Virus record (IMG/VR): IMGVR_UViG_3300018962_000001
Location: 124,001 to 188,000 of that record
Length of the DNA: 64,000 bases
Direction: 5' to 3' (one strand)
Each line of letters begins with the position of its first letter. Positions within the stretch are counted from its first letter, which is position 1. The translations under genes and the position numbers were made by a program. The notes under the pieces were generated by a model. That model was not told where the DNA came from, did no database searches, and saw nothing but the letters and a program-made list of their open reading frames with translations. This document shows positions 12,874-38,378 of this stretch, piece by piece.

Positions 12874-12877
12874 TGCC

Positions 12878-17158: not shown

Positions 17159-17162
17159 ATGC

Positions 17163-20100: not shown

Positions 20101-23100
20101 GTGCCGAAGTCCGTAAATTGCCAGTGCAACCCGGATTCGGTGAGATCATAGGTCCCAGCACTCTGAAGCACCGGGAAAATGCCCGGCGCACTGGTATCAA
20201 ACGCGATCTGGAGCACTTCCTGCTGGGTAATGGTCGCCCCCATCGCTGCCGTCATCGCCCAGCGGGTGGAATCGATCGTCGTCCCGGTAAAGCGATCGAC
20301 CAGATCACTCAATCGCCGAGATTCGAGTCGTCCTCCAAGACTAAAGGCCGTTTCCGACGCCTGGAGGTGCCCACTCACGCCAAAGCTCAGATCCTGAAGT
20401 GCCCGCAGCTGGCCGCTCACCAGAAATGACGCATCCAGTTGTTGCAGGAGCGCGGCCTTGATTTCGACCGCATGGAGCACCCAGTAGGTTGCGGCAGCAA
20501 AGGTGCCATCCAGAGTCACCTGCCCTGGCACCGGAACATCCGCGTACTCAATCGACACACTGGAGTTTGCGGATGCCGAGCTGGCTCCGGCGCGATGATT
20601 CAGGCGCAGGGGACTTTCGCCCTCACCCACGGCGAAGGTCGCATCCCGTGTCCCAACAATGGCAAGCGCACGCGCCTGGGCCGAGGTCGTCGATAACGCC
20701 ACACTTGGCGTGGTTTCTTGGGCCGTATCCTTCGTCGTCACGGGAACGCCGAATGCGCCACTCCCGCCGCTTCCCGTCGTGGCCGCATTGGTAAGCGGGA
20801 CTGCGAGAATAACCGCCGAGTCGGACACCGCACTGAGGGTGGCAGTGGTTGGCCCGGTGGTTGGCGCAGCGCCAATACCACGAAACACGGCGAGCTGCGA
20901 TCGTCCGCCACCATCAAAATCGTGAGTGATCCGAGTCCAGGTGATTCCATTCCCGGCCACCGAGTCGATCGTGAGGGGGACTTGCCGCCGCGCAACCACG
21001 GCGACCAGAATGGGCGTATTCGACGGCGGGGACCAGGTGCTCGTGGCGACCGTTTGCGCGGCAAGCGCTGATCCCACCACCTCGGTGCCGAATCCCAGCG
21101 GCGCAATCTGTGGCGGAGCTTGCAGCTTTGCTCCCACGCTGAAGCTGCACTCTCGTTCCTCAACGGTCATGATCGCAGGTTGAATCACCAGAACCGAGGC
21201 CGCCGCCGCCGCCGCATACGTGAACCCCGATGTTTTCACGCCACTGGGGGAAAGAGCACTGAGGTGTTGTGATGCGGTGGCGAAGCTGATTTGGACGCCG
21301 GAGGTTTTTCCCTGTGCCTGGATCGTCATCTCGCCTGGTGGGGTGATCGTATTCAGCGCGCCAATGGAGGAAACAAAAAGCAATAAGAGTCCATCGGCGA
21401 CATCTGGTTGGAGTGACGGAGCAAGGATCTGGGATTCGGTCGACAGATTGGTTGAGCCATCGATCACATTGACCAGGCTGGAACGGTCCACATTGTTGAG
21501 GGTATAGATCGTTCCCCCACTCGGGACCGCTTCTTCAAGGGTAAAGGTAAACGGCTGCGCTCCACCCGCCGGGGCGTAGCGTCCAAACACCGCGTCGGCG
21601 ACCGAATAGTCTTTGTTGGTTCGGATCAGGAGACTCCACCCTTCGGGCGGCGTAATCTCCACGCGCGGTAACGTCCCTGTATTACGAATGGCAACATGCG
21701 CAATCAGCGCCTGATCCGCGAGGGTCTGTGCCACGCTCGTGAGCGTGATCGTCCCCGCAGCGGCTTGGGGTGGCGTGACGCCCACCCCGACAATCGAGAT
21801 CGGCTTCGATTGCACACGCTGTCCAACGTGCAGCATGCCGCCAAGCGGAACCAGGAGCGAATGTTCGCCCGTGGTCGTGCCTGCTGCAATTTTGCCCCCT
21901 ACCGTAAAGGACCGATCCACAACCGTGATCCCGGCACTCGCTGCTAAGACCGAGATCGATCCCAGGAGATAGGAATCATCGGCTTGTTTTCCGTTCTGAG
22001 CGAGCCGGAGATTCGGGGCTTTGCCCGCCTGATCCACGATGACCACATGCAGGTTATACGATCCAGCGGGAACCGTGAGCGGTATATTGATGGTATCAAG
22101 GACGGTCACCGGCGCTTCGCCGGTGGGCAGCAGTTTCGTGAGATCGAGACTCGATGCGGGACTTTGCCACGTGACCGTTCCCGTCGAGGGATGGCGGAAT
22201 TGGTAATAGATTAGCCAGCGGAGAAAGCTGCGGCTCACGCCCAGGTTCTTCCACTCGCTGGTGATCGTCGTTTGTTGCCCTGCACGAATCGTGGTCCCTC
22301 GGATGCCAGTCATCGCATAGCGATACCCCGACGTGGACATACAGAGGATAAAGTTCTGCTGTTCTTCAAGCGTTAAGTTGCTATATGCCTGTGAGATGTT
22401 GCCATTCATCACCGAATCGACGCCGTAATAGCGGATGTGATCGAGGGTCAGGGCATAGTTCTCGCTGCCTCGGTACCATTCCCCGGTAAACGGCGCATCA
22501 TAGATCTGGGTCCGCAGCAGTGCCCATAGGGTACGACTCGCCCCCATTTTGCGGCGGAGGTCAAAATGCTCGATCTTGCCGAGGCTTTCGCGTCGCGCGC
22601 CGACCCAGGGATAGGTCGATCGGGCATATTCGTAGGAATAGGTGTCATCGGTCATGATGTACACAAACGTGTTTGGAAACATCGCCACCAGTTGATCGAT
22701 GACATATTGCTTGGTCGCGTTCGTTGCAAAATACGGGGCGTTGCCCGGAAGATACCCCTCCCCAAATTGTCCATACCAGAACAGATCGATCGCCTCGAAG
22801 TTCACATTCTTATCGTAGCGAGTCGCAATCGCTTGAAAGCAAGCGAGCAACCGTTCCAAGAAGTAGGCATGATTCCAGTTCGGACACCACAGGTCGCCGA
22901 GCCACGCGCCATACGGGGAAACCGTGAGGTAGCCGGGCACTTTTGATCCGGTATAACCGCCCCCACCCATCGGGTTTAACCCAAACTGGAAACGTCGCCC
23001 TTTCTGGGTTGCCCACCCGACCCAGGTATCCAGCGAGGACCAGTCATACACGCCCTGGCTGGTTTCAAAGTCATTCCAGAACCGCCGTCGATACGAGACG

Positions 23101-25754: not shown

Positions 25755-28700
25755 TTAAATATATCCAGCGGCACGCAGATCGCGCAAAAAGCCTGCCCAG
25801 GCTTCTTCTTGCCGGGCATCAATCATCCGGGCAATTTGATCAAGGGTATAATTGACGCCCTCAATCTGGTAGGTCGGAGCATAGGTGATGGGCGGCAGGT
25901 TCAGCCGGGTCGCCACGGCAGCCAGCGCGGGCGCTGCTGTTTGTGCCCGGAATCGGTCAAAGGTCGCAGCGCCGCCACCAAGCGAACGGTCGAGCAATCC
26001 ATGCTCCAGCTCCTGTGTCAATGCGACTAATTGATCCTCCATCGCCGCCCGCAATCGCGCGAGTCGTTCGCGTAACCGATCGACGGGAACGACGACCTCC
26101 GGCCCAGCCTCGCCCAATAAGTAATTGGTACCAGTATGCGCCCCGATCCCGGTCACCGGCTCCCGAATGACGCCACCTGTGGCATACCCAACCCAGCCAC
26201 CACCACGCATCACCGACTGGACCCCAGGCAGATCACGAATATGGCCGTACCGGCGTTTAATATAATTAATCGCGGCGATCAGGTTTTCAATGGGATCATA
26301 GATGTCTCCGGGATTGCCAAGATCCCGTCCGTTCGCATAGCCCAGATCTCCGGTATAGGCACGGGCGGATGCCCGTTTGTTGGCATTAAAGGTTTGCGGA
26401 ATCGTTTGAGCCAGGCCGCGCGATGGATACCCCGCGCGAAAATTCGAGTCCCATAGATTGATAGATCGGGGATTCCAGCCTGACTCATACTTGCCAAGAA
26501 TGGACAGCCCCTGAAGCCAATCGCGGGTAACCGCAGCCCCTGCCAGTGCCTCGCTGATCCACGATCGCGCTGGCCCCGGTGTGCCCGGCCAGTACTCGCC
26601 ACCCCGTGGGTCCGGCGTGTCTTGAGTCACGCCCCGCAGTTCGCGGAGGAAGGCCGCGAGTTCCAGCTTGGGATCAACCCAATTGCCCCGTTTGTCACTA
26701 ATCTGATAGTGGAGGTGATCGACCATTTCCCCGTCGCGGTAGGGCGTATGCCCGACGTTGCCGATGTCATAGCCCCGCTCGATCTGCTGGCCCGCGCGGA
26801 AGTTGGCTGGATCAACGAGGTGGGCATAGTAGTGTTCGCGACCCGATTGCCCGCGAATTTGAATATAGTTTCCACCGAATCCGTTCCAGCCCTGATAGGA
26901 AACGACGCCGCTCTCCAGTGCTCGGATGATCGTCCCTTCATCGGCGAGAATGTCGATGCCCTCGTGTCTCCCGGTGGTATCAGGACGCGCATCCCCCCAC
27001 CACGATACGATCTCCCGGCTGCCGACCATAAACTCGGCAGCGTCATAGACATCGGTCCCGACCTGGGCATCCTCAAAGGCACGCAGTAAGCCTTCGACCA
27101 GCGCGAGTGCCCACTCTTTCACTTTGCCGAAGATCGCCGTGCCCACACCAGCAAAGGCATCACCAGCAAAGTCGAACGACTCGAATCCCACGGCGCTCAG
27201 CCCACGATCCAGCACCCACCCCGCACCTTGACTGATCCAGTTAATGACATCGCCGATCGCGTCGCCAATGCCAAGTTCATAGGCCGGGTAGTTCCCCGGT
27301 AGCAACCCACGCCGCCGCAGGCGCGCGGTCTCCTGATGCGGGAGGACCGTTGAGCCGCGCGGCAACATAACGATTTCCGGTCCCTTTTCTCCCACAATGG
27401 CCGGGCCACCTGGATGGTACCCCCGCCGCGTGCCCCGCGCATATTGGGGAATGGTCGGAAGATTAAAGGTATCGGGAAGCGGCGCGGCAGCACCGAGCTT
27501 CTCGGCAATCCAATTGATCGCGTCGCGGAATTTGTTGACAAAGAACTCAAACCCTTTAATGGCAGCATTAAGTCCCGACGATCCATCCGCCGGGCCGATG
27601 GCCGTGTTTGCCATCTTTTTCATAATGGTGCCGATCTCGTTAGCAGCTCCCACGAACGGGGCGAGAATGGCCTCCTTGATCTCGCTGATTCGGTCGCTCA
27701 TCCCTTTCCAGGCGCGATAGCCTCCATTGAGCACGCCATTGCCCCGGTCATCCCAGGTGCCGACAAAATCACGCATCGCGGTTTTGCCACCCTCGACGAG
27801 ATTCGCAAAGAGTCCCAGCACGCCAGGGCCACCAACGGTGTACGTTCCCACCAAATTGTTCCGAATAAGATTCGGAAGATTAACGACCAGTTGTGCCACC
27901 TGGCCGATTAAGGAGTCGCCGCTGGTATCACTCAGCCCAATCCACTGCTTCACGGTGCGACTGGTATCGTTGATTAACCCCCAGAATAGCCCAAGGACGC
28001 CGCCGCCGCCGGACGCATAGCGCCCGACCAACTCGCCGATGAGTCGGAAGAATCCATTCGCGAGGCGTTGGATCGTGCCTAACATCGATCCGGCAGCAGA
28101 ATCCGATCCGACCCAGGCAATCAGCGCATCGAGGCCTTCATTGACAAGCCAATACAGCCAGCCCAGTACCCCGTTCTGCCCGGACGCATACGTGCCAACC
28201 ATCCATCTGATCGCAGCGAGATAGTCATCCGCAAGCGTGCGGATCAGACCGAGCATCCCCCCCTGTTGGTAGGCTCCGATCCATCGCTCAATATTTGTTA
28301 GCGCGGTATCCACCAGCGTTGCCAGGAGTCCAAGCAGACCGCCGCCGCCGGGAGTCCACGTGCCGACCATCCAACGGATGGTCTGAAGCATGGCATCCGC
28401 GAGACCCTGGATTTTCGCAAGCCCCCAGTCCCATAAGTTCTGGAACCACCGCACGATCCCGTTGACCATATCGGGAATAATCGAGTGCCCAACCAGATCC
28501 ACCCACAGCTGGTAAAAGGCGTTTTTCACCCCTTCCCACAAGCCAACTGCCAGGCCGATCACCGTGGTCACTGCCCCGGTGAAGATCGATACTACACTGT
28601 CAATAATCCCCTGGACAAAATCGCCAACCGCTTGCCAAAGCGGCTGCCAATCGCCGGTATAGAATCCGTAGATGATTCCCGCAACAATCCGCACCACCCC

Positions 28701-31700
28701 GGTGATCACCGTCGCGATTAGTTGAATCACGCCAAGGAAGACCTCAATGATTCCGCCAAGCCCGACGATCACGCCCGGCAGCACCCCGGACAGCAGATTG
28801 ATGATGAATCCCAGGACATAGAGAAACGTCGTTCCCAGAATCGTGCCCACCGTCACCAATACCGCAGCGATACCTCCTAAGATGGGCATGAGCGACCGCA
28901 GGGTATTGAAAAAGATGGTGACCAGAGGACTCAGCACCTGGAACGCGGTTTGGAGATTCGCCCAGAGGCGTCCGAACGCTAACCCAACCGCTCCCACGGC
29001 ACGTTGAAAATCATGAAAGAGCGGTTGCAGGAAGGCGATGAATCGACTCCAGGTCGGCGTGACCGTGGTGTTCCAGTACTGAACAAACTCGGCGACGCGC
29101 CCCTGAATATTGCCCCAGTTCTTCAGCCACGCCACCGTTAACAGCCCGATCACCAGCGCGATCGCGCCAATCGCGAGGGTGACGGGGTTGATCGCGACCG
29201 CTAAGGCTGAGAAGATGGCTGGCCCGGTGCGGAATAGCCCCAGGAGGTTGCTGACAGGATTGGTCAGCATGGTGAGCGGGTTCAATGCCCGCCAGATTGC
29301 GCTGAACACCGGTCCCAGCCGTGATCCCACGGCTGCCAGGACCGGGAAGCGCGTGCCGAGGGCCGTAAATAGGCCCGTAACCGTGTTGACAGGGTGGATT
29401 AACAGTTGGAATGGATTCAGGATTCCGCGCAGCGCAGGGGCTAGGGGACCAAGGTAGGTTGTCACCCCTTGGATTCCAAGATGAATCGCACCGCCAACGC
29501 GGAAGACGGCAAAGGCCGTCCCAATCCCCGCGACGACACTGAGAATCGTCCCGCCATTGGTTTGCAAGAAGGCAAAGAAGGGCTGGATTTCGGCCCGCAC
29601 CCCTTGCATCGTCGCCCGCAGATTGGCAAACTCATCGGGGAGTTGACCGAGTCCGCCGAACTCGGATTCCCAATCCACCCGTGCTTCGCCCCCCGCAGGC
29701 ATCGGAGGCAGCGGGATGTCGGGAGCCGTCATGCCAAAGAGGGCAGTGACAAATTGGACAACCGCATTGCGGGCTAAGTCGATTCGCTCCTTAGCCGTAT
29801 CAATCGTGGTGCTGAATGATTGCCATGCTTGTTGGCCTTGGGCCAGGCCAGTCGTGATATTGTCGGTGAGCTGCGTGATCGCCTGGGTCGCGTCACCAAA
29901 GGTCGATTGTTGTCCACGAGCCGCTTGATCGGCTGCTTTTTGCGCCTTTTCCTGAATGTTCAGGATCATCTGCTCAATTTCTGAGTACTCTTGTGATCCC
30001 TCGGCATAGCGACTGCGAAGGCCCATCAACAGCTCAAGGGCTTCGTTATATCGTCCTTGATCCGTCAGGAGGCGCGCTTGGGCCTTGATCTGCCGCTCAT
30101 AGGCGTTTTCTGCCTTGATCCCCGAACTTGCGATCGAACGATCCCGCTGGGCTTGCAGACGCTCAATCTGCGCCTCGATGTTGAGCCACTCTTTCGATCC
30201 CTCGGCAAAGTGCGACTGTCGCTCCCGCAGCTTCGCAATCGCTCCATCATAATCGCCGGTTGCCTTTTCCAGATTGGCTTGCGCGGCGATCTGTTGATCC
30301 ATCGCCTTCGCAGCCTTGCCGGTTGCCTCCTCCTGCAACCGTGCCCGGCGTTCTTCGAGCACCTGGATCTGGCGCAGCGTGTCAAAGTACTCCTTGCTCC
30401 CCGGCTCCAAGCCCGCCAACTTTTCGCGCAAGATGGCGATCTGCCCGTTGGTGTCCTCCAGTTCCAGGTTGTATTTTTCCTGGGCGGTTCCCACCTTGGC
30501 AGCATCGCGGGCGGCGTCCTCCGCTTGCTGGCGTTGGAGATTGGCGATCTGCTCCATGATGCGGTAGCGCTCTGCCGGATCAGTGGTTCGTTCAAGCTCC
30601 TCGTTAAGCAACGCGATTTTGCCGGGCGTATCCGCAATGGCGAGCTGGTAGTCGAGGAGGGCTTTTCGCTGCCGTTCCTGTTCTTCCGTCGCTTCACGCC
30701 GGGCTTGATTGAGTTCTCGCTCCGCTTCCAGATATTCCAGTGTGCCGGGGGTCAATTCACTTAAGCGTTGCTCTAGGATCGCGGTCTTTTCCGCCGCCGT
30801 CGCCGTTTCGAGGGCATTGCGGCGCTGCGCCTCGGCCAAGGCTTCCGCTTCTTTGCGCGACTTTTCTTCAGCCGCCGCCTGAAGCTGCGCCAACTGGGTC
30901 CGCAGCCGGTATCCTTCTTCAGACTCTTCGCCAACCGCCGCGATCCGGTCGCGCAACATTTGCTGGCGTGTTGCATCATCGGCAATCGCGTATTGATAAT
31001 CCCACTGTGCGTCCGCTAAGCGCTTGAGCCGATCTTCTTCCTTTTTGGTCCCACTTTCGCGTTCATCGGCCAGGCGATGCTCCAGGTCATAGATCTGCGC
31101 GAGAATCTTGTAGTATTCTTCACTTCCATGCTCAACATTCGCAAGTTCACCGCGCAGGATCGCCAGTTTCCCGGCAGTATCGGCAATATGGAAGTTGTAG
31201 TCGCGCTGGGCTTTCGCGCGGCGGTTGGCTTCCAAGACCGCCTCGCGTTCCCCCGGCGTCATGCCCGGCAGCAGCCCAAGTTTGCGATCTTCATTGATCT
31301 GGCGTTGAATTTGCAGCACCTGCTCCATGAAGCGGAGTTCCCGCTCTTGGAGGCGGTCGGCGGCGGCAAATCCGGCCAAACGGTCGGCGACCACCTGCTG
31401 CTGCTGTTTCAAAATCTCAAGCTGCTGCTGGAGTTGGGTCTTTTGATCGTCTTGGGCCTGTTCCTGGGCCTCCAACATCGCCAGCTGATCGCGCGCGGCA
31501 CGTTGTTGCGTAAAGGTGCGTGCGTTGCGCAGGGCACGTTCTGCCGAGCGTGTTGCTTCTTGGAGACGGCGGCGGGCGGCGGGATCATCCAAGGCCCGCA
31601 GCTTCGCTTGCACCTCATCGATCTGTTGGGTAAGAACGGCCTGATTCAACCGCTCTTGAATACGTAGGAAGATGTCGCGGTTTTGTTCGCCGAGGCGCGA

Positions 31701-33398
31701 CTCGATCTGCATCAATGATTCGGCACTGATCCTCCCCGTTTGATTGATGGAGTCGATCGCCTGCGCGACCAGTTGCGTGATCCCCGGATCTCCATTGGTG
31801 CCCACGGAGATGCGAATCGCTTCCTCAGCACTAATTTTGCCCGCCGTAACCAGCGCCGTCAGCCGATCTTGAACCTCCTCGGCGATCGTCGTCAGTGCGC
31901 CAAAGTCCGAATCGTCCCACTCAAGATAGGCCCGGAGGACCGGACTAAACCACGTGTCAATGGTCGAGAGCGGCCCTTCTCGCGGCGGCGAGAAACCACG
32001 CAAGAACGCTTCGATCCGGCTAGTGATTGCCAGGATTGCCATCTCGACGTAGCTACTGGCTCCTGCTAACATGCCATCGGCGAAGGCTGCAATGCTGTTC
32101 ACACCGCCAAGGAACAGTTCACGCGACAGGTTCTGAATCAGGCGAAGAATGAGTCCACTTAATCCCAGCAGGAGATTCGTAATCTGGGTGGCAGCCGTGC
32201 CGAAATCGCCGCTAAACAGGGAGATCAAGGCTCCCCGGAGCGGCGCGAGCGCGGCCAGCACCTGCGCTGCAAACTGGCCGTATCCTCCCACGACCCGATC
32301 CACAAAGGCCAGCGCTGGGGCGGTTGCCTGGCTGAATCCGGTTGCCATTGCCTGAACCGTGCTGATAGCGAGGCGCATGCCTGCGGCAATGCCCTGCCCC
32401 AGCGTGGCGGCGGCGGCGAATAACGCCGGGTCTTTCAGTAAATTTTCGAGGCCAACCAACTGCTCTTTGATGACATCAAAGATTGGTGCTCCGAACACGC
32501 TGCGCAGCATGAACCAGCGGTCAGAAATATTCGACAGAATACCGTCCATCGATCGGGCGGCAAGTTGGGCGGCACCGCCGAACTTCTCGGCAAGAATCTC
32601 GTTGAGGGCGGTGAGCGCCTGATCCGCCGTGCCGAGATACGTTCCCTGCGCATCGAACTTGAGTCCCTTCATCTCAAGATCGGAGCGAGTCGCAATCGCA
32701 AGCTCTCGGAGGCGGCGGAAGGCATCGCCGAAGTCACCCGTTCCAACACGAGCAATCGCGAAGGTGACTTGTTCCAATTGGCTGCTTAAATCACGGATCG
32801 CCGGACGAGTGACGACCGCTGCGTTGGCGACGTTGAGGAGAAATTCTTGCGTGCGCGCGCCAGCAACCTGGAGTTGCCGATCCGCTTCCACCAGCGCGGG
32901 CAGATCAAACGGGGTTTGCACATTAATCGCCTGCAATTCGGCAAGGCGACTTCGGGCGCGCGCGAGCATCTGCGCTGTCGTATCGCCTTCCTGTCGCAGC
33001 AGGGTCATGTAGGAGATGATGCTGTTTTCGAGTTGCTGGTTGGGACCAACCAGCCCGGAGAGTGCTGCCGAGGCAATCCGGCCTAACTCACGGAATCCAA
33101 AGGTCAACGCGCCCACGCGCGTGATCAGGCCGACCATCCCCCCGCCTAAGACGTTGATCGACGATGACAATCCTGACGAGGTTTGCTGGGCACGGACGAA
33201 CGTGTCGCGAAGCACGGAAGCCAGGGTTCGGGCTGACGCGGTAAGTGAACTCATGGATCGCGTGCTCGTCTGCGTGTTGACGTTAAACCCCTGGAGCTGT
33301 GATCCAAGCGCTTGAAGATTTGACCCGATGGCGCGGAGGGCGTTCAGCGCCGACTGGGCATTGCCCGTAAAATTTAAGAGAACCTGAATTTGATTCAC
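25755..33398 (-). CDS. Tape measure protein with C-terminal M23 peptidase and lytic transglycosylase domains
   Basis: GGAGG RBS + GTG 33398; TPFDLPAL..A..QL and GILSNISD TMP motifs; long amphipathic repeats; HEGID/YAHL/HLH (M23); ESGWNP..IN.WDSN, GLAQ, DPIENL.AA..YI..RYG (SLT). Confidence 0.95.
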   Translation of the reverse strand: MNQIQVLLNFTGNAQSALNALRAIGSNLQALGSQLQGFNVNTQTSTRSMSSLTASARTLASVLRDTFVRAQQTSSGLSSSINVLGGGMVGLITRVGALTFGFRELGRIASAALSGLVGPNQQLENSIISYMTLLRQEGDTTAQMLARARSRLAELQAINVQTPFDLPALVEADRQLQVAGARTQEFLLNVANAAVVTRPAIRDLSSQLEQVTFAIARVGTGDFGDAFRRLRELAIATRSDLEMKGLKFDAQGTYLGTADQALTALNEILAEKFGGAAQLAARSMDGILSNISDRWFMLRSVFGAPIFDVIKEQLVGLENLLKDPALFAAAATLGQGIAAGMRLAISTVQAMATGFSQATAPALAFVDRVVGGYGQFAAQVLAALAPLRGALISLFSGDFGTAATQITNLLLGLSGLILRLIQNLSRELFLGGVNSIAAFADGMLAGASSYVEMAILAITSRIEAFLRGFSPPREGPLSTIDTWFSPVLRAYLEWDDSDFGALTTIAEEVQDRLTALVTAGKISAEEAIRISVGTNGDPGITQLVAQAIDSINQTGRISAESLMQIESRLGEQNRDIFLRIQERLNQAVLTQQIDEVQAKLRALDDPAARRRLQEATRSAERALRNARTFTQQRAARDQLAMLEAQEQAQDDQKTQLQQQLEILKQQQQVVADRLAGFAAADRLQERELRFMEQVLQIQRQINEDRKLGLLPGMTPGEREAVLEANRRAKAQRDYNFHIADTAGKLAILRGELANVEHGSEEYYKILAQIYDLEHRLADERESGTKKEEDRLKRLADAQWDYQYAIADDATRQQMLRDRIAAVGEESEEGYRLRTQLAQLQAAAEEKSRKEAEALAEAQRRNALETATAAEKTAILEQRLSELTPGTLEYLEAERELNQARREATEEQERQRKALLDYQLAIADTPGKIALLNEELERTTDPAERYRIMEQIANLQRQQAEDAARDAAKVGTAQEKYNLELEDTNGQIAILREKLAGLEPGSKEYFDTLRQIQVLEERRARLQEEATGKAAKAMDQQIAAQANLEKATGDYDGAIAKLRERQSHFAEGSKEWLNIEAQIERLQAQRDRSIASSGIKAENAYERQIKAQARLLTDQGRYNEALELLMGLRSRYAEGSQEYSEIEQMILNIQEKAQKAADQAARGQQSTFGDATQAITQLTDNITTGLAQGQQAWQSFSTTIDTAKERIDLARNAVVQFVTALFGMTAPDIPLPPMPAGGEARVDWESEFGGLGQLPDEFANLRATMQGVRAEIQPFFAFLQTNGGTILSVVAGIGTAFAVFRVGGAIHLGIQGVTTYLGPLAPALRGILNPFQLLIHPVNTVTGLFTALGTRFPVLAAVGSRLGPVFSAIWRALNPLTMLTNPVSNLLGLFRTGPAIFSALAVAINPVTLAIGAIALVIGLLTVAWLKNWGNIQGRVAEFVQYWNTTVTPTWSRFIAFLQPLFHDFQRAVGAVGLAFGRLWANLQTAFQVLSPLVTIFFNTLRSLMPILGGIAAVLVTVGTILGTTFLYVLGFIINLLSGVLPGVIVGLGGIIEVFLGVIQLIATVITGVVRIVAGIIYGFYTGDWQPLWQAVGDFVQGIIDSVVSIFTGAVTTVIGLAVGLWEGVKNAFYQLWVDLVGHSIIPDMVNGIVRWFQNLWDWGLAKIQGLADAMLQTIRWMVGTWTPGGGGLLGLLATLVDTALTNIERWIGAYQQGGMLGLIRTLADDYLAAIRWMVGTYASGQNGVLGWLYWLVNEGLDALIAWVGSDSAAGSMLGTIQRLANGFFRLIGELVGRYASGGGGVLGLFWGLINDTSRTVKQWIGLSDTSGDSLIGQVAQLVVNLPNLIRNNLVGTYTVGGPGVLGLFANLVEGGKTAMRDFVGTWDDRGNGVLNGGYRAWKGMSDRISEIKEAILAPFVGAANEIGTIMKKMANTAIGPADGSSGLNAAIKGFEFFVNKFRDAINWIAEKLGAAAPLPDTFNLPTIPQYARGTRRGYHPGGPAIVGEKGPEIVMLPRGSTVLPHQETARLRRRGLLPGNYPAYELGIGDAIGDVINWISQGAGWVLDRGLSAVGFESFDFAGDAFAGVGTAIFGKVKEWALALVEGLLRAFEDAQVGTDVYDAAEFMVGSREIVSWWGDARPDTTGRHEGIDILADEGTIIRALESGVVSYQGWNGFGGNYIQIRGQSGREHYYAHLVDPANFRAGQQIERGYDIGNVGHTPYRDGEMVDHLHYQISDKRGNWVDPKLELAAFLRELRGVTQDTPDPRGGEYWPGTPGPARSWISEALAGAAVTRDWLQGLSILGKYESGWNPRSINLWDSNFRAGYPSRGLAQTIPQTFNANKRASARAYTGDLGYANGRDLGNPGDIYDPIENLIAAINYIKRRYGHIRDLPGVQSVMRGGGWVGYATGGVIREPVTGIGAHTGTNYLLGEAGPEVVVPVDRLRERLARLRAAMEDQLVALTQELEHGLLDRSLGGGAATFDRFRAQTAAPALAAVATRLNLPPITYAPTYQIEGVNYTLDQIARMIDARQEEAWAGFLRDLRAAGYI

Positions 33399-33410
33399 GG
33401 TTGTCCCTCC

Positions 33411-33439
33411 TTGCCGAAGGGACGAACGTGATCTACAGT
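33411..33439 (+). promoter_or_regulatory. Sigma70-type promoter for orphan pentamer RNA
   Basis: TTGCCG-17-TACAGT, 11 nt upstream of the GGNNN tract. Confidence 0.55.
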
Positions 33440-33450
33440 GCGGTGAACGC

Positions 33451-33530
33451 GGCCTGGATCGGCCTGAGACGGCATCGACGGGCAAGGCACGGTTGGGCTA
33501 TCCGTGGCTAGGTATGGTTGGGCGTGGCGC
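33451..33530 (+). ncRNA. Orphan (GGY-NN)16 pentamer-tract RNA, candidate guide
   Basis: 16 in-register pentamers, 13 starting GG; flanked by promoter and terminator. Confidence 0.65.
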
Positions 33531-33559
33531 AGCACCTCACATGTGTGAGGTGCTGTTTG
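33530..33559 (+). terminator. Rho-independent terminator
   Basis: CAGCACCTCAC-ATGT-GTGAGGTGCTG-TTT. Confidence 0.75.
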
Positions 33560-33688
33560 ATTCTTGGGATGCCAACGGTGCCCCATCCGAGCCTCGCACG
33601 ATACGGATCATGTGTCGGATGGGCGAGCACGGGGGAATGGTGGCCCATATAGGAGAAGTCGGGGCAGATGCGCGGACTTCTGCCCCGT

Positions 33689-33717
33689 AGTATAGCAAAG
33701 ACCAGCGGCGTCGTCTA
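33689..33717 (-). promoter_or_regulatory. Promoter re-starting transcription towards tape measure gene
   Basis: TAGACG-17-TATACT with extended -10 TG; followed by hairpin CGGGGCAGA...TCTGCCCCG. Confidence 0.65.
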
Positions 33718-33906
33718 GGATGGGTCGGTGGGGGACTCCCACGGGAAGGGAATCCCATTGGCGAGAAAATACTTCCGCCAAAACTCGGTGTCGAAGGGAT
33801 GGCGATCCGGCGGCGGCGGCGTGAGATGGCGCGTCTTAATGGCTGCCGCGATTGCCACCAGCGAACGGTAGATCACGGCCCAGAACAAGCGATCGGCGTT
33901 CTTCAT
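33715..33906 (-). CDS. Small hypothetical protein
   Basis: AAGGAGG RBS before ATG 33906 (MKNADRLFW...). Confidence 0.65.
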   Translation of the reverse strand: MKNADRLFWAVIYRSLVAIAAAIKTRHLTPPPPDRHPFDTEFWRKYFLANGIPFPWESPTDPS

Positions 33907-33916
33907 TGTTCCTCCT

Positions 33917-34924
33917 TTAAGGAGCAGTGCGCTCCGCTGCTTCGATGGTGTGAATCCCGGTGAGAAGTTGATAATACGCCAAGCTTCCAGGCTGAAATAA
34001 GAGCAGATAGCCTTGGAGCAACTCTTTCCGCGTGGCACGCGCGGGTTCTAAGGTGATGCGTGCTCGAATCAGCGCCATCCGTTCGTCATCCGTCAACTGC
34101 GGATCGGCCAGCCGATCTTCAAGCAGCAGGATCTTCTGGACGCGCGCAGCGGCAGCGAGGGCCATTGTGGTCGGCGAGATGATCGAGTCGGAGTCGTCCT
34201 CCGGTGGCGTATAAGGCCGGGGGGCAGCTAATCGGGTGGTTGGCCCCGTCGCCGGACGCAGACGTTGATAAATCTCGACCCACGACAGGCCCAACCGCCG
34301 GAGTGCGAGGATTTCCGCACGCCGGTTCGGCAGATTCTGATAGGCCACCGACTGACGCAGATCCTCCCAGAGCGGCTGAATCTCGCTGAACCACTGCTGA
34401 CGGCGGAGAACATCCTGTGGCCCCGGATCAAGCACTCGCACCTCCTCCGGCCAGAAAGCAATCGCCTGATCGATCTGGAGATTAATGAGTCCCAGTGGCA
34501 CGCCCGCAGCATCGCACTCAACACCATCTTGATCGATCCACGGCTTGTGCGGTGATCGCCGGATGAGATGGGGTTTCGTTCCCTGGATGACCGGGAAGAT
34601 CGCCGGATCGAGTGGGGGGACAAAGGCCGCATGCGACGTGGGATCATCCACGCGGGCCAGATCTGGGATCGTGTGCCCACACCCGGAACAAAACTTCGCA
34701 CCGGGTTCGATTCCACGATACCCACAGCGGGTACACTGATTTGCTGCGCGCGCGCGCTGTAGGCACTGATTTGCGAGCAATGTCCGGGACCGAAACTCTG
34801 CCAGATCAGATCGATAGAGCAGGGTGGTCCGGTAGGCTGCATACAAGGTCGCCATCAGGACTCCTACCTGAACTCCCTCACTCGAAAGATGGAATAGGAG
34901 ATCCACGAACCAATCATTCATCAC
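33917..34924 (-). CDS. Membrane-anchored Zn-ribbon protein
   Basis: N-terminal hydrophobic helix; CTRCG...GAKFCSGCG; coupled to upstream HTH gene. Confidence 0.7.
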   Translation of the reverse strand: MMNDWFVDLLFHLSSEGVQVGVLMATLYAAYRTTLLYRSDLAEFRSRTLLANQCLQRARAANQCTRCGYRGIEPGAKFCSGCGHTIPDLARVDDPTSHAAFVPPLDPAIFPVIQGTKPHLIRRSPHKPWIDQDGVECDAAGVPLGLINLQIDQAIAFWPEEVRVLDPGPQDVLRRQQWFSEIQPLWEDLRQSVAYQNLPNRRAEILALRRLGLSWVEIYQRLRPATGPTTRLAAPRPYTPPEDDSDSIISPTTMALAAAARVQKILLLEDRLADPQLTDDERMALIRARITLEPARATRKELLQGYLLLFQPGSLAYYQLLTGIHTIEAAERTAP

Positions 34925-35136
34925 TCCTCCCGTTCCTCCGGCGGCGGCGGCGCGAACAATGCCAGCAACGGCACACCGAGCGCGGCAGCCATTTTGTCAA
35001 GCGATCCGATCGTTAACGTCTCGACGTGGCGATTATGCCAGGCTTTGCGAACCGTCCCCACCCCCAGATCGGCCCGTCGTGCCAGCTTCGAGATATTTAA
35101 CGCCTGGGCGGTGGCGATAACAGCTACTTGAAACAT
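34921..35136 (-). CDS. Cro/C1-type (XRE) HTH regulator
   Basis: LNISKLARRADLGVGTVRKAW...TIGSLDKMAAALGV; AAGGAGG RBS. Confidence 0.85.
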   Translation of the reverse strand: MFQVAVIATAQALNISKLARRADLGVGTVRKAWHNRHVETLTIGSLDKMAAALGVPLLALFAPPPPEEREE

Positions 35137-35176
35137 TCGATCCTCCTTCCTCGTGTGGAGCGCGCATCATTGTGCA

Positions 35177-35260
35177 TTGACAGACCGCATATCTATGTTA
35201 TACTGTCATTATAATGTATAGTATATAGAGTATAGCATACAAAACCTATGCTACATTATA
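35177..35260. promoter_or_regulatory. AT-rich divergent promoter/operator region between HTH gene and pentamer array
   Basis: TTGACA-16-TATACT (35177-35204); near-palindrome TATACTGTCATTATAATGTATAGTATA; inverted repeat TAGCATA-N7-TATGCTA (35233-35253). Confidence 0.7.
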
Positions 35261-35309
35261 CTCCCACTCCCGGCAGAATGCTAGACATTCGACAGATGAA
35301 TTCGGACAT

Positions 35310-35710
35310 GGTTGGGTGTGGATTGGCTAGGCTAGGAGAGGCACGGTGAGGTCTGGCACGGATGACTCTGCACTGAGTCCAATCCCTTCGGGGTATCTGG
35401 GTATGGCATGGGAACGGTTGGGTCCGGTAAGGATCGGCTGGGAGCGGCAAGGTGTGGCAAGGTCGGGCTGGGCCGGGCAACGCAGGGCACGGATGGCGGT
35501 GTATTCCGCCACCATTCCCCACCAGGGGAATACGAGGATGGCTGGGCGCGGGCATGGCGAGGCGTGGCAAGTCGAGGCTGGGCCGCGCTAGGTGCGGCAA
35601 GGCACGGATGATCGTGGATTCGATCACCATCCCTCACACGAGGGTTATTTGGCTCGGATCGGTCAGGATTGGCTAGGTCAGGTGGGGCTGGGTGAGGCTT
35701 GGTTTGGTAC
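35310..35710 (+). repeat. Array 1: four (GGY-NN)n pentamer units, the first three each closed by two hairpins (candidate guide RNA array)
   Basis: Tracts of 10, 16-18, 11-13 and 12 pentamers at 35310, 35400, 35540, 35651; conserved GGCAC-GGATG-stem-TGNAYT-stem end. Confidence 0.9.
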
Positions 35711-35720
35711 AAGGAGCAGT

Positions 35721-36359
35721 ATGATGGCATCCAACATGATTCAAGCGACGGTTGAGATCCAGGGAACGAAGCCACTGTTGTGGCACGCCTTTACGCCCGA
35801 CAGCATTCCGGCGGACGGCAAGAAGGAAAAGACCGGGGTGGCGGGTAACGATCCCCAGGAATGGCGGCGATCCTTCCTGGCGGATCACGAAGGCCGCTTG
35901 TTTGTGAACCCGGAATACATCTTCGGCTGCCTGCGCGATGGCGCGCGACACACCAAAAAAGGCCGTGGATCGATTATGTCGAATGTGGCGGCAACGCTTC
36001 AGATCGTGGACGAGCGGATCTACACCGATCGCTATTTCCCACGCAACGGCGCGACTGGCCCCTTTGATCCGGCATCGGCGGATCGCCCGCCGATCGAGAT
36101 CACCGAGCCGGTTTATCTCGACGTGCGATCGGTGAAGAACCCGTCCACGAAAGGTCGGAACGTCCGCTACCGGGTGGCGGCGAGTCCAGGGTGGCGGGCG
36201 AGCTTTACGATTCTGTGGGACAAAACCATTGTCAGCCGCACCGAGATGGAGGCGGTCATTACTGATGCGGGCCGACTCGTCGGGCTGGGTGATGGCCGAT
36301 CGATCGGCTTTGGTCGATTCATGGTGGTGCCAGGGTCCATCACGTTTACCGAGGTCTAG
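35721..36359 (+). CDS. Stand-alone RAMP / Cas7-like RNA-binding protein (Vipr-like)
   Basis: AAGGAG RBS; VEIQGTKPLL (beta1), LFVNPEYIFGCLRDGA (alpha1), C-terminal Gly-rich loop GLGDGRSIGFGRF, all RAMP hallmarks; no other cas genes. Confidence 0.85.
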   Translation: MMASNMIQATVEIQGTKPLLWHAFTPDSIPADGKKEKTGVAGNDPQEWRRSFLADHEGRLFVNPEYIFGCLRDGARHTKKGRGSIMSNVAATLQIVDERIYTDRYFPRNGATGPFDPASADRPPIEITEPVYLDVRSVKNPSTKGRNVRYRVAASPGWRASFTILWDKTIVSRTEMEAVITDAGRLVGLGDGRSIGFGRFMVVPGSITFTEV

Positions 36360-36369
36360 AGTCTTTCGA

Positions 36370-36427
36370 GGCGAGGCATGGTGAGGTGAGGTATGGGGTG
36401 GTTGGCGAGGTACGGCCTGGCAAGGAG
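36370..36427 (+). repeat. Pentamer tract (unit 5) forming the leader of the HNH gene
   Basis: GGCGA GGCAT GGTGA GGTGA GGTAT GGGGT GGTT GGCGA GGTAC GGCCT GGCAA GGAG. Confidence 0.85.
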
Positions 36428-36434
36428 TTTGAAC

Positions 36435-36752
36435 ATGGGCATGAAACGACAACCTCCGAAGATCTGGGAAGGAACCCGCAAACGAATATTCGAACGCGAT
36501 CGGGGGATCTGCCAATCTCCCCTGGCTCCACCCCTGTGTCAAGGGAAACGCGGCGAGTTAACGCTTGCCACGGCGCATATCGACCACCGGCGAAGCGGTC
36601 GGTTTGGCACGAATGCGGATAGCAACCTCCGGGTGCTCTGCCGCGCGTGCCACGTCCTCCGCGACGATCCGCGCCACCGAGGCATGATCGGCGGAGCCTT
36701 GCGCGACGGGATCATCCCTCCCCATTGGCGGGAGCTAACCTGGGGAGAGTAG
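36435..36752 (+). CDS. HNH endonuclease
   Basis: RKRIFERDRGICQ...C...AHIDH......GTN.DSNLRVLCRACH. Confidence 0.9.
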   Translation: MGMKRQPPKIWEGTRKRIFERDRGICQSPLAPPLCQGKRGELTLATAHIDHRRSGRFGTNADSNLRVLCRACHVLRDDPRHRGMIGGALRDGIIPPHWRELTWGE

Positions 36753-36974
36753 ATGGGTCGTCCAAGGCACAGAACGGGTGCCGTGCGCCAGCTGCCGTGG
36801 CGCAGAGTCGTCACGGCAGCACGTGATGGCGGAATCATGGGGGCGGTGCTGGGAGGGGTGTTCTTTGGCCCTTCTGGCGCGCTGGTGACCAGCTTAGTAG
36901 GAGCGGTGGCAGCGGCGGCGGTTCGCTGGTATCGAAGCGTCAAGGCGAGAGGTCGCATGGGAAGGCATGGATGA
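36753..36974 (+). CDS. Small glycine-zipper membrane protein
   Basis: GGAG RBS, starts at HNH stop; GGIMGAVLGGVFFGPSGALVTSLVGAVAAAAV followed by basic residues. Confidence 0.6.
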   Translation: MGRPRHRTGAVRQLPWRRVVTAARDGGIMGAVLGGVFFGPSGALVTSLVGAVAAAAVRWYRSVKARGRMGRHG

Positions 36975-37325
36975 TCGTGGATCGATCCCACTTCTCGGTT
37001 GGGCAAGCGAGGGTCTGGCAAGGACAGGCAAGGCTTGGCTCGGCAGGGTCGGGTTCGGCTGGGCAAGGATACTGGTGTTTCCAGTACCATCGATTGGGTG
37101 TGGCGGGGCGGTGGTAGGGTGGGGCTTGGCTTGGTCCGGCACGGCAGGGATGATGGTGTCTCCATTCCACCTCATGGTCGGGCGAGGAGGGGCGAGGCAG
37201 GGCTAGGCGGGGCAAGGTGAGGCCCGGCAAGGTTCGGCACCGATCCTCGTGTCATCGAGGCCACCACGGGGTATGCCGAGGCGTGGTAAGGTGAGGCTAG
37301 GCTGCGGTGAGGTCCGGCGAGACGG
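36943..37325 (+). repeat. Array 2: one degenerate plus four (GGY-NN)n units with single hairpins
   Basis: Tracts at 36997 (14), 37097 (10), 37176 (13), 37270 (about 11); hairpins TACTGG-TGTTT-CCAGTA, ATGG-TGTCT-CCAT, CCTCG-TGTCAT-CGAGG. Confidence 0.9.
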
Positions 37326-37327
37326 GG

Positions 37328-37358
37328 AACAGGACGGGTGCTGGTCACCCGTCCTGTT
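37328..37358. terminator. Strong hairpin between convergent array and tail chaperone gene
   Basis: AACAGGACGGGTG-CTGGT-CACCCGTCCTGTT, 13-bp perfect stem. Confidence 0.7.
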
Positions 37359-37830
37359 GATTCTCCGGTGCCTGGTCGGCGAACTCATCAACCTTGTTGG
37401 CACGTTTGTAGGCTTGCCAGAAGGCTGACTGCATCGGCGGCGGCGGCGGCGGGGCGAATGGATCTTGATAGACCTTCTCAAACGGCGGCAGCGCCTGCGG
37501 TTTCTTGCCACCGAACGCGGGTCCAAGGACGCGGGCCAGGGCGGTTTCGAGGGCCATAATCTGACTCATTTGCTGGTCCCAGCGATTCCGCGCGACCTGC
37601 TGGTACTCGCGATGGAGTCGCCGCCACCGCCAGCCCAGCACCTCCTCCAGGGGCAAATGCCGGGTTGCCACGATCTCGGTCACCATGTCGTCGATCAGGG
37701 TGCCAATGGCTCCTATGATGTCGAAGGCGAGTTGACCACCGTTGCGCCAGCTGGTGGTGGAGTCTTGGCCGGTTGTTGATTGCGCTTGCCCCACAGCTCC
37801 ACCGCTTGCCGGGCGAGCGTGAAGTTTCCC
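37345..37830 (-). CDS. Tail assembly chaperone, -1 frameshift extension (gpGT-like T part)
   Basis: Open in the -1 frame from slippery site 37830; LPLEEVLGWRWRRL resembles gpT-type motif. Confidence 0.8.
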   Translation of the reverse strand, partial: GKLHARPASGGAVGQAQSTTGQDSTTSWRNGGQLAFDIIGAIGTLIDDMVTEIVATRHLPLEEVLGWRWRRLHREYQQVARNRWDQQMSQIMALETALARVLGPAFGGKKPQALPPFEKVYQDPFAPPPPPPMQSAFWQAYKRANKVDEFADQAPENQQDG

Positions 37831-38378
37831 AGTGCCGCTGCCAAGTCTTCGGACTGCCGGATGCGCCAGGCCAGTGCCTTCACAATCGGCGCGACCTTTA
37901 CATCGTCCTCCGACAGCTGCCGGAAAAACAACTCCGCCTCTTTCTTCTGGTGATCCTTGCCACCGAACAACACGATCGCGGCAATCCGCAAAAAGTGTTG
38001 CACATTGATGGTTGCAAGCAAGGCGAAGATCGTGGCTTCAAATGGCTGCGCCGACTGGACCTTGCCGTTCACCAGCGCTGTAAACGCACTGCCCAGCTGC
38101 CCGGCGAGGTATTTTTCAGCCCGCAACGACACGTCCCCAATCACATTACACAGTGCCAAGATCGCGTGAATATCGGGTTCTCCGATCTCAAAGACTCGTC
38201 CGCCAAAGGTGACTCGATAGTCCACCACTTCCTCGACCACCGCCTCCGTAGGCCCGTCCTCGGCAGCTGGTGGAAACAAGGGTTCATCGGGCGCAGCGAT
38301 CGGTTCCGATCCCCAGAGCGATTGGTCGTTGGGCAAGGGAGCCTGGCCCCCCAGGTCGAAGCTATTGCCGTCTGCCAT
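37713..38378 (-). CDS. Tail assembly chaperone (gpG-like)
   Basis: Directly after major tail gene; acidic N-terminus; contains slippery site. Confidence 0.8.
   Translation of the reverse strand: MADGNSFDLGGQAPLPNDQSLWGSEPIAAPDEPLFPPAAEDGPTEAVVEEVVDYRVTFGGRVFEIGEPDIHAILALCNVIGDVSLRAEKYLAGQLGSAFTALVNGKVQSAQPFEATIFALLATINVQHFLRIAAIVLFGGKDHQKKEAELFFRQLSEDDVKVAPIVKALAWRIRQSEDLAAALGNFTLARQAVELWGKRNQQPAKTPPPAGATVVNSPSTS
37824..37830 (-). other. Programmed -1 ribosomal frameshift site G GGA AAC
   Basis: X XXY YYZ heptamer in frame with gpG ORF; -1 frame continues without stop to 37345. Confidence 0.85.

What the first reader, a model, noticed from the sequence alone, without database searches (positions are those of the whole stretch)
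35651..36437. Pentamer tracts run straight into the ribosome-binding sites of both protein genes
Seen: U4 ends GGTTT GGTAC AAGGAG cagt ATG (RAMP) and U5 ends GGCCT GGCAA GGAG tttgaac ATG (HNH). These two tracts lack the 3' hairpin that closes most other tracts; the Shine-Dalgarno replaces it, and in U5 it is in pentamer register. Inference: surplus RAMP polymerising on its own mRNA leader would occlude the RBS, giving translational autoregulation that matches protein to guide supply and limits nuclease expression.
Basis: partly seen in the sequence, partly recalled or inferred. Interest (0 to 1): 0.65.

Follow-up and report, generated by a model that had tools for sequence, protein, structure and literature searches.

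The report
Guide-RNA tracts fused to gene starts
In a phage-borne VIPR system (a CRISPR-like RNA-guided machine first described in 2026), two pentamer-repeat guide RNAs lack their closing hairpin and run straight into the start signals of the RAMP (Vipr) and HNH nuclease genes; for the nuclease this layout recurs in about 40% of related loci and probably ties nuclease synthesis to guide loading.

Summary
U4 (35651-35710, 12 perfect GGNNN units) ends directly at the AAGGAG in front of the RAMP gene. U5 (36370-36428) ends in GGCAA GGAGT seven bases before the HNH ATG. Neither has the hairpin tail that closes U1-U3 and U6-U8.

The locus is a VIPR system, described in 2026 bioRxiv preprints. The RAMP is a Vipr protein, the tracts are vrRNAs (GGY/NN repeats), and the HNH is the accessory gene.

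In 152 non-identical related loci, a tail-less tract runs straight into the HNH start in 55 of 71 loci that have tracts between vipr and HNH. It is often the only tract present. A tract in front of vipr is rare (9 of 147).

These leader tracts are as well formed as other vrRNAs. Their NN positions differ between near-identical loci, so they are real programmable guides, not dedicated operators. Their constant last repeats (GGCAAGG..) double as the Shine-Dalgarno.

A Vipr filament and a 30S subunit therefore cannot occupy the same RNA. Translational throttling, chiefly of HNH, is a reasonable but untested inference. The searchable VIPR papers do not mention it.

Verdict: a real, conserved and undescribed feature of a known system.

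The parts
35177..35204 (+). Sigma-70-type promoter (TTGACA, 16 nt spacer, TATACT, extended TG) that probably drives the whole array-vipr-HNH operon
   Evidence: 11 of 12 matches; the only + strand promoter-like site in 33400-37500
35310..35650 (+). Tailed vrRNAs U1 (35310-35364), U2 (35411-35490) and U3 (35551-35610), each followed by a two-hairpin tail beginning GGCAC GGATG
35651..35710 (+). U4: tail-less vrRNA tract of 12 perfect GG units (10 of 12 GGY), forming the 5' leader of vipr
35711..35716 (+). Shine-Dalgarno AAGGAG of vipr. It starts at the base after the last U4 unit and is out of pentamer register by 2.
35721..36359 (+). vipr (RAMP, 212 aa; the likely true start is the second ATG at 35724, giving 211 aa)
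36370..36428 (+). U5: tail-less vrRNA tract of 7 units (the seventh only 4 nt) plus 5 units, forming the 5' leader of HNH. The last unit GGAGT is the core of the SD.
36423..36428 (+). Shine-Dalgarno AAGGAG of HNH, formed by the last two repeats (GGCAA GGAGT) and in register
36435..36752 (+). HNH endonuclease (vap, 105 aa) with CX8C, HIDH, N and CXXCH motifs
36753..36974 (+). orf73, a glycine-zipper/TM-like peptide with no counterpart in related loci. Its 3' end overlaps a vrRNA remnant.
36955..37010 (+). Lone tail-like element sharing about 24 nt with the U3 tail and preceded only by decayed repeat units
37012..37358 (+). Downstream array: U6 (37012-37071), U7 (37113-37152) and U8 (37176-37240), each with a hairpin tail; short U9 (37280-37304); and a 13-bp terminal hairpin (37328-37358)
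33456..33556 (+). Orphan upstream tract U0 (about 15 units, some decayed), followed directly by a 12-bp terminator hairpin

Best explanation
The locus is a phage-encoded VIPR system of the Vipr-HNH kind.

U4 and U5 are genuine vrRNA guide tracts that serve at the same time as the 5' untranslated leaders of vipr and of the HNH nuclease gene.

In this clade, the vrRNA that immediately precedes a protein gene drops the structured tail. It keeps only the constant terminal repeats (GGCAAGG followed by A, G or T). These repeats supply or directly abut the Shine-Dalgarno, and the ATG follows within 0-10 nt.

Vipr binds one protomer per pentamer and buries the two G's (published structure). A Vipr filament on the leader and a 30S initiation complex are therefore mutually exclusive on one RNA molecule. 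Each transcript is either translated or coated. As Vipr accumulates it should shut down translation of HNH, and in this phage also of vipr. The coated leader is then left as the guide RNP after the unprotected mRNA body is degraded.

Shown here: the anatomy, the family membership, the conservation, and the guide-like evolution of the leaders. Inferred: mutual exclusion, negative feedback, and maturation by trimming.
For: System identity:
- A profile of 27 homologues hits the PDB chain 'SUSP1 Vipr protein' (36pp_D) over its full length, E 2.5e-9.
- The AF2 model (pLDDT 83.6) matches Csm3/Cmr4/Cas7-11.
- GGY/NN tracts of 8-16 units are present.
- The HNH gene follows vipr in 133 of 152 non-identical loci.
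- The VIPR description comes from 10.64898/2026.04.26.720920.

Conservation of the leader layout:
- 55 of 71 loci with tracts between vipr and HNH have the last tract running into the HNH start with no hairpin.
- In the 47 strictly called cases, the last in-register unit ends 5 nt or less from the ATG in 24 and 10 nt or less in 32.
- The layout is present in 47 of 121 clusters at 80% Vipr identity. It is scattered over the Vipr tree and over many phyla, with at least 8 changes forced by well-supported branches.

Leaders behave as vrRNAs and as guides:
- The GG fraction is 0.91 in leaders and 0.91 in other tracts. Y at position 3 is 0.90 against 0.86. Median length is 14 against 12 units.
- L114 and L117 have vipr genes that align at 1.00 identity, but their leader NN differ at most units while GG and the last repeats are kept. 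The same holds for L010/L014 against L125.
- In 9 loci the HNH leader is the only tract within at least 1 kb on either side.

The SD is part of the tract:
- GGCAAGG is the commonest terminal motif of both tailed and leader tracts.
- In L114 and L117 the ATG follows the last unit directly.

Binding mode: one Vipr protomer per repeat, with G1 and G2 flipped into protein pockets (10.64898/2026.04.26.720927).

Alternative layout: in 62 loci the HNH start overlaps the end of vipr (-1 to -44 nt). This suggests that HNH translation is tied to vipr in that layout as well.
Against: - There are no expression, processing or binding data for this clade.
- The first VIPR paper reports sRNA-seq of nuclease-type systems, including single-vrRNA ones (its fig. 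S20, legend only readable). Discrete small RNAs are probably released. If release is fast, translation may be unaffected.
- Intergenic space is tightly packed on both sides of the tracts, which start 3-15 nt after the vipr stop. Compaction alone explains part of the adjacency.
- A tract in front of vipr is rare (9 of 147 loci), usually with a separate SD.
- About 7-10 loci place a hairpin between the tract and the HNH RBS, so the fusion is not obligatory.
- Two close pairs show conserved rather than variable leaders (L010/L014 and L059/L135).
Confidence: 0.55

Rival explanations
1. Guide only, no regulation. U4 and U5 are ordinary guides that sit next to genes because the phage genome is compact. 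They are released or trimmed quickly, and Vipr binding has no meaningful effect on translation of vipr or HNH. The tail is dispensable because the downstream mRNA, or a nuclease stop at the filament edge, defines the 3' end.
For: - NN are hypervariable in leaders of near-identical loci, and some loci have the leader as their sole tract.
- Tracts also start 3-15 nt after the vipr stop, so packing is tight on both sides.
- In the layout where vipr and HNH overlap, terminal vrRNAs end directly in a terminator hairpin, so tails vary with context.
- sRNA-seq of nuclease-type VIPR loci is reported in the first paper.
Against: - The SD is built from the last repeats, and the ATG lies 0-10 nt from the last unit in most cases. 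Any Vipr on the unprocessed transcript must therefore collide with initiation.
- Relatives use hairpin tails or hammerhead ribozymes to separate internal vrRNAs. No such separator lies between the leader and HNH.
- The tail is lost specifically and recurrently at gene-proximal tracts, across 47 clusters.
Confidence: 0.3
2. Dedicated autoregulatory operators. U4 and U5 are not guides. They are decoy tracts whose only role is to titrate surplus Vipr and occlude the RBS.
For: - They lack the tail.
- The U5 SD is in register.
- The leader is conserved at about 85-98% in two close pairs, while an upstream tailed guide was replaced.
Against: - Leaders are full guide length (median 14 units) with normal GGY quality.
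- NN differ between loci with identical vipr.
- In 9 loci the leader is the only vrRNA, so those systems would have no guide at all.
- A vipr leader is present in only 9 of 147 loci.
Confidence: 0.08
3. Decaying remnants. U4 and U5 are truncated vrRNAs left over after genes were inserted into an array, with no function.
For: - U5 carries a 4-nt unit (a register slip).
- A lone tail-like remnant lies after orf73 at 36955-37010.
- Some leaders have degenerate units.
Against: - U4 has 12 of 12 perfect GG units.
- Leader tracts as a class are as intact as tailed ones.
- The layout recurs in 47 clusters.
- No tail follows HNH in the single-tract loci.
Confidence: 0.04

Closest known systems
VIPR systems (Vipr RAMP plus vrRNA; bioRxiv 10.64898/2026.04.26.720920, 10.64898/2026.04.26.720927, 10.64898/2026.10.15.759431), in particular the nuclease-associated types III/V
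   Same: - A Vipr homologue.
- GGY/NN pentamer tracts of 8-16 units.
- Structured 3' tails on most vrRNAs.
- An adjacent accessory gene with an HNH domain.
- Phage-borne.
- Relatives with hammerhead-interspersed arrays and with single-vrRNA loci.
- No self-targets.
   Different: - Two vrRNAs here, and the HNH-proximal vrRNA in 55 related loci, have no tail and are fused to a ribosome-binding site.
- The papers describe the tail as an invariable 3' extension and do not mention RBS, translation control or leaders (term searches).
- The type (III or V) could not be assigned, because the figures are not readable here.
Translational repression by proteins that coat periodic or unstructured leader RNA: B. 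subtilis TRAP on (G/U)AG repeats overlapping the trpG/trpP RBS; T4 gene 32 protein polymerising along its own leader; CsrA on GGA motifs in the SD (from general knowledge, not tested here)
   Same: A multimeric or cooperative RNA-binding protein recognises short repeats that run into the SD, so that binding excludes the 30S subunit. In the gp32 case, surplus protein represses its own mRNA.
   Different: Here the repeat tract is also a programmable DNA-targeting guide. The main repressed gene would be the partner nuclease rather than the binder itself. Repression is inferred, not shown.
Type III CRISPR crRNA maturation by 3' trimming to the edge of the Cas7 (Csm3/Cmr4) filament (general knowledge)
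   Same: A RAMP filament of defined length protects the guide, and unprotected 3' RNA is removed by host nucleases. This would explain how a tail-less leader becomes a mature guide.
   Different: The 3' extension here is a translated mRNA, not a repeat remnant. No trimming data exist.
Autoregulation of CRISPR-Cas by guide-like RNAs (long-form tracrRNA for Cas9; CreR/CreA RNAs for Cascade) (general knowledge)
   Same: The effector's own RNA-binding activity is used to limit expression of the system.
   Different: Those act on promoter DNA through partial guide-target pairing. Here the proposed control is direct occupancy of the mRNA leader.

Membership tests
VIPR system | Vipr protein homologous to characterised Vipr (SUSP1) | tested here: met
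   An hmmsearch with the profile of alignment A1 against PDB sequences hits 36pp_D 'SUSP1 Vipr protein': E 2.5e-9, query 8-202 against chain 5-190.
VIPR system | RAMP fold (RRM core, glycine-rich loop, thumb) | tested here: met
   The AF2 model has pLDDT 83.6 and pTM 0.80. Foldseek against the PDB puts Csm3, Cmr4, type VII Cas7 and Cas7-11 on top at E about 1e-7, probability 1.00. A G-rich loop GLGDGRSIGFGRF lies at the C-terminus.
VIPR system | Residues that read the GG (SUSP1 H17, D177, thumb R138) | tested here: inconclusive
   In the HMMER alignment, SUSP1 H17 falls on the nearly invariant H22 and the GDWR loop falls on GDGR with invariant D182. Invariant R149/R151 lie in the aligned thumb stretch, but their exact equivalence is not established.
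VIPR system | vrRNA: tandem GGY/NN pentamer repeats, about 9-16 units | tested here: met
   Ten + strand tracts lie in 33456-37304. U4 has 12 of 12 GG and 10 of 12 GGY. Shuffles give none of at least 7 units.
VIPR system | Conserved structured 3' tail after the repeat tract | tested here: not met
   Met for U1-U3 and U6-U8, which share a hairpin with complementary but different stems. Not met for U4 and U5, the subject of this finding: no structure beyond shuffles. The system as a whole still qualifies.
VIPR system | Adjacent accessory (vap) gene with a DNA-related function | tested here: met
   HNH (Pfam PF01844 at its cut-off; several PHROG HNH families at 1e-8) follows vipr here and in 133 of 152 related loci.
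VIPR system | vrRNA expressed, bound by Vipr, and guiding DNA recognition by the 1-nt skip rule | not testable with these tools
   There is no self-target in the window above shuffled controls. Exact 9-unit scans of IMG/VR gave only chance-level hits.
Translational operator bound by its own or its partner protein (TRAP/gp32-like) | Protein-binding repeats overlap or abut the SD or start codon | tested here: met
   The U5 SD is the last in-register unit, and U4 ends at the base before the SD. In relatives, the last unit ends 10 nt or less from the HNH ATG in 32 of 47 loci.
Translational operator bound by its own or its partner protein (TRAP/gp32-like) | Protein binding lowers translation of the downstream gene | not testable with these tools
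   This needs reporter fusions or toeprinting.

The most novel reading that the evidence does not exclude
In the Vipr-HNH clade, the guide RNA and the nuclease mRNA are one molecule. Vipr loading on the 5' leader switches that transcript from 'nuclease message' to 'guide RNP'. This gives a built-in governor of the nuclease-to-guide ratio. It may also deliver the nascent HNH in cis to the filament assembling on its own mRNA. In this phage the same device also feeds back on vipr.
Probability: 0.3. Interest if true: 0.75.

Novelty: new variant of a known kind. Interest (0 to 1): 0.55.

Why it matters
VIPR is a very recent addition to RNA-guided systems, and its biogenesis and regulation are largely unexplored.

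A guide that is also the 5' leader of the nuclease gene, with the ribosome-binding site built from the last guide repeats, raises three points:
- It would show that the 'invariable tail' is not required for a functional vrRNA.
- It points to a simple way of keeping a free HNH nuclease from outrunning its guide complex.
- It matters for engineering: heterologous constructs that separate the vrRNA from the vap gene would lose this coupling.

It also yields a simple annotation rule for this clade: the tract that precedes a gene is tail-less.

Tried and rejected
- **Split-vrRNA idea.** The idea was that the HNH gene was inserted between a tract and its tail. It was suggested by the lone tail-like element at 36955-37010. 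It was rejected as a general rule because no tail follows HNH in single-tract relatives.
- **Self-targeting by U0-U8 within the 64-kb window under the 1-nt skip rule.** Best scores were no better than those of shuffled guides.
- **Natural targets in IMG/VR by exact 9-unit patterns.**
  - U4 units 1-9: one hit, in a giant-virus MAG, whose flanking units match 2 of 6 bases (chance).
  - U4 units 4-12: none.
  - U8 units 3-11: one hit with 3 of 8 flanking bases (chance level).
- **Rfam on 33000-38000.** No family matched, so there is no ribozyme in this locus.
- **Flanking genes as conserved partners.** The HTH, the Zn-ribbon protein, orf107, orf149 and orf221 have no counterpart in any related locus.
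- **Pfam, NCBIfam and PADLOC on the RAMP.** There was nothing beyond a weak Cas6 hit (E 0.028) and PHROG 4652 of unknown function.
- **VIPR type assignment (III or V).** Not possible, because the figures and supplementary tables are not held.
- **Conserved leader seen at first.** The first close pair compared (L010/L014) suggested a conserved, non-guide leader. More pairs showed hypervariable NN, so a 'dedicated operator' reading was downgraded.
- **Vipr-HNH binding.** No complex-prediction job was run, because the report does not claim that Vipr and HNH bind.

Full report
**1. What is in the sequence**

Positions 35300-37360 on the + strand hold a dense set of in-register GGNNN pentamer runs.
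- Ten runs of at least five units lie on the + strand, all between 33506 and 37304. One lies elsewhere on either strand.
- Dinucleotide-chain shuffles of the window give 0.23 runs of at least five units and none of at least seven. Seven such runs are observed.

Laid out in register, the region reads in this order:
- a strong promoter (TTGACA, 16 nt, TATACT; 35177-35204);
- three tracts U1-U3, each closed by a tail beginning GGCAC GGATG;
- U4 (35651-35710, 12 of 12 GG), followed directly by AAGGAG and the RAMP gene (35721 or 35724 to 36359);
- U5 (36370-36428), whose last two units GGCAA GGAGT are the Shine-Dalgarno of the HNH gene (ATG at 36435);
- orf73;
- a lone tail-like remnant;
- tracts U6-U9, ending in a 13-bp hairpin.

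Folding the 3' flanks gives a common stem-loop for U1-U3 and U6-U8. The stems are complementary but different in sequence: ACUC/GAGU, GGCGG/CCGCC, GAUCG/CGAUC, ACUGG/CCAGU, CCUCG/CGAGG. The flanks of U4 and U5 fold no better than shuffles.

**2. What the system is**

[quoted passage not shown] It describes VIPR systems as follows:
- a small RAMP (Vipr);
- vrRNAs made of 9-16 GGY/NN pentamers followed by a conserved 3' tail;
- an accessory vap gene;
- mostly phage-borne;
- seven types, of which the nuclease-carrying ones are types III and V.

The window's protein fits this description.
- It has more than 2,000 homologues, all unnamed, and belongs to PHROG 4652.
- A profile of 27 homologues hits the PDB chain 'SUSP1 Vipr protein' at E 2.5e-9 over its full length.
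- Its AF2 model (pLDDT 83.6) matches Csm3, Cmr4 and Cas7-11.
- The 105-aa neighbour is an HNH with intact CX8C, HIDH, N and CXXCH motifs.

The surroundings are a phage structural module: major head protein, neck, tail-tube-like protein, and a 2,576-aa protein with M23 and SLT domains. The contig is a 204-kb IMG/VR viral genome.

The locus is thus a new member of a known system. What remains to be judged is the special anatomy of U4 and U5.

**3. Comparative test**

I fetched related loci from viral, genome and metagenome collections and obtained 152 loci with non-identical vipr genes. In each I located vipr, HNH and all tracts.

HNH follows vipr in 133 loci. Two layouts exist:
- In 62 loci the HNH start overlaps or nearly touches the end of vipr (-44 to +44 nt), and the tracts lie after HNH.
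- In 71 loci, tracts fill the space between vipr and HNH.

Among those 71 loci:

| Arrangement before HNH | Loci |
|---|---|
| Last tract runs into the HNH start, no hairpin | 55 |
| Hairpin between the tract and a separate SD | 7 |
| Other | 4 |
| No GG tract | 5 |

In the 47 loci that pass the strict call, the last in-register unit ends 5 nt or less from the ATG in 24 and 10 nt or less in 32.

The layout occurs in 47 of 121 clusters at 80% Vipr identity. It is scattered over the Vipr tree and across Acidobacteriota, Chloroflexota, Armatimonadota, Cyanobacteriota, Chlamydiota, Actinomycetota and viral contigs. Well-supported branches force at least 8 changes.

A tract directly in front of vipr is rare by contrast. 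It occurs in 9 of 147 loci, in at least 4-5 separate places on the tree, and usually with a separate SD 10-17 nt beyond the tract.

The rule that emerges: the vrRNA that immediately precedes a protein gene has no tail.

**4. Are the leader tracts guides or operators?**

Three results point to guides.
- **They are as well formed as other vrRNAs.** The GG fraction is 0.91 in both classes. Pyrimidine at position 3 is 0.90 in leaders against 0.86 in others. Median length is 14 against 12 units.
- **The leader can be the only tract.** In nine loci with at least 1 kb of flank on either side, the HNH leader is the only tract. It must be the guide if those systems work at all.
- **Close relatives differ at NN.**
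  - L114 and L117 have vipr genes that align at 1.00 identity. Their leaders differ at NN in most units, while the GG and the last repeats are kept.
  - L010 and L014 against L125 (92% vipr identity) behave the same way.
  - Two other pairs (L010/L014 and L059/L135) have conserved leaders.

The 3'-terminal units are constant. GGCAAGG is the commonest end of both tailed and leader tracts, and in the leaders it serves as the SD (AAGG or AAGGAG). In L114 and L117 the ATG follows the last unit with no spacer at all.

The leaders are therefore programmable guides with a constant 3' handle that doubles as the ribosome-binding site.

**5. Mechanism**

The VIPR structure paper (10.64898/2026.04.26.720927) shows three things:
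- one Vipr protomer binds per repeat;
- adjacent protomers jointly hold each GGY;
- both guanines are flipped into protein pockets.

With the SD guanines being G1G2 of the last repeat (U5 and many relatives), or lying within one unit of it (U4), a filament on the leader and a 30S subunit cannot share the RNA. That step is a structural inference.

From it follows the likely behaviour. Early transcripts are translated. As Vipr accumulates it coats the leaders, stops HNH translation (and vipr translation in this phage), and converts the RNA into a guide RNP. The unprotected message would then be removed, by analogy with type III crRNA 3' trimming (general knowledge).

The other layout, in which HNH overlaps the end of vipr, also subordinates HNH translation to vipr. 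This agrees with selection for a limited, Vipr-linked nuclease dose.

None of this is shown experimentally. The three VIPR papers I could search contain no relevant mention of ribosome binding, Shine-Dalgarno, autoregulation or mRNA leaders, nor does a fourth paper that recovers VIPR arrays.

**6. Rivals**

- **Guide only.** This is the main rival. The tracts would be ordinary guides placed tightly against genes and released quickly, so that translation is unaffected.
  - In its favour: tracts are packed just as tightly against the vipr stop.
  - In its favour: sRNA-seq of nuclease-type and single-vrRNA loci is reported in the first paper (only the legend is readable).
  - Against it: relatives use hairpin tails or hammerhead ribozymes to separate internal vrRNAs (seven type II hammerheads in L062; hairpin tails). 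No separator lies between the leader and HNH.
  - Against it: the SD is made of repeat units.
The guide-like evolution and the sole-tract loci make this unlikely.
- **Decayed remnant.** The intact repeats and the recurrence make this unlikely.

**7. Verdict**

- The RAMP and HNH identifications are correct.
- Coupling of the tract to the HNH RBS is a conserved and previously undescribed feature.
- Self-regulation of the RAMP is not general.
- The tracts are guides first.
- Repression is inferred.

Novelty: a new architectural variant within a known kind of system.

Noticed in passing
window 33456-33556 (+): An orphan vrRNA-like tract (about 15 units, several decayed) is followed at once by a 12-bp terminator hairpin. 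It lies 1.7 kb upstream of the array, separated from it by three minus-strand genes. It resembles the 'solo vrRNAs' of 10.64898/2026.10.15.759431, and it overlaps the annotated 5' end of the 2,576-aa ORF on the other strand.
   Followed up: partly
window 36955-37010 (+), overlapping the end of orf73 (36753-36974): A lone tail-like element shares about 24 nt with the U3 tail and is preceded only by decayed repeat units. The last codons of orf73 are thus read from a vrRNA remnant. orf73 has no counterpart in any related locus and may be young or spurious.
   Followed up: partly
window 36398-36404 (U5): The seventh unit of U5 is only 4 nt long (GGTT), which shifts the register by one. Similar 4-nt units sit just before the terminal GGCAAGGCAAGG motif in L006 and L012. 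This hints that the terminal handle may be a separate module.
   Followed up: no
window 35631-35650 (+): The second hairpin of the U3 tail (a 5-bp stem followed by TTATTT) scores as terminator-like, right before U4. If it is leaky, it would limit read-through into vipr.
   Followed up: no
window 33715-35136 (-): Three genes are divergent from the VIPR promoter: a Cro/C1-type HTH protein (71 aa), a 335-aa protein with a zinc ribbon, and a 107-aa ORF. None is conserved next to vipr in other loci.
   Followed up: yes
L062 4366-5222 (+); motifs also seen by eye in L065, L070, L072, L079, L094, L098: Seven type II hammerhead ribozymes (Rfam RF02276, 45-55 bits) are interspersed with vrRNA tracts downstream of HNH in Bacillota relatives. 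The window itself has none.
   Followed up: partly
L038, L039, L051 (between vipr and HNH): These relatives carry pentamer arrays with a non-GG fixed motif (GTC-type units) instead of GGY. This matches the non-canonical VIPR repeats reported in 10.64898/2026.10.21.760802.
   Followed up: no
window 25755-33485 (-): A 2,576-aa ORF carries C-terminal M23 peptidase and SLT transglycosylase domains. It is probably a tape-measure or tail lysin protein. Further giant ORFs (1,426-2,235 aa) lie at 6949-23870. The VIPR operon sits on the opposite strand, inside the tail module.
   Followed up: partly
L114 vs L117: The two metagenome loci have vipr genes that align at 1.00 identity but HNH only 89% identical. 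One has one vrRNA and the other two, and the first nine units are shared. This suggests recombination or cassette exchange downstream of vipr.
   Followed up: partly
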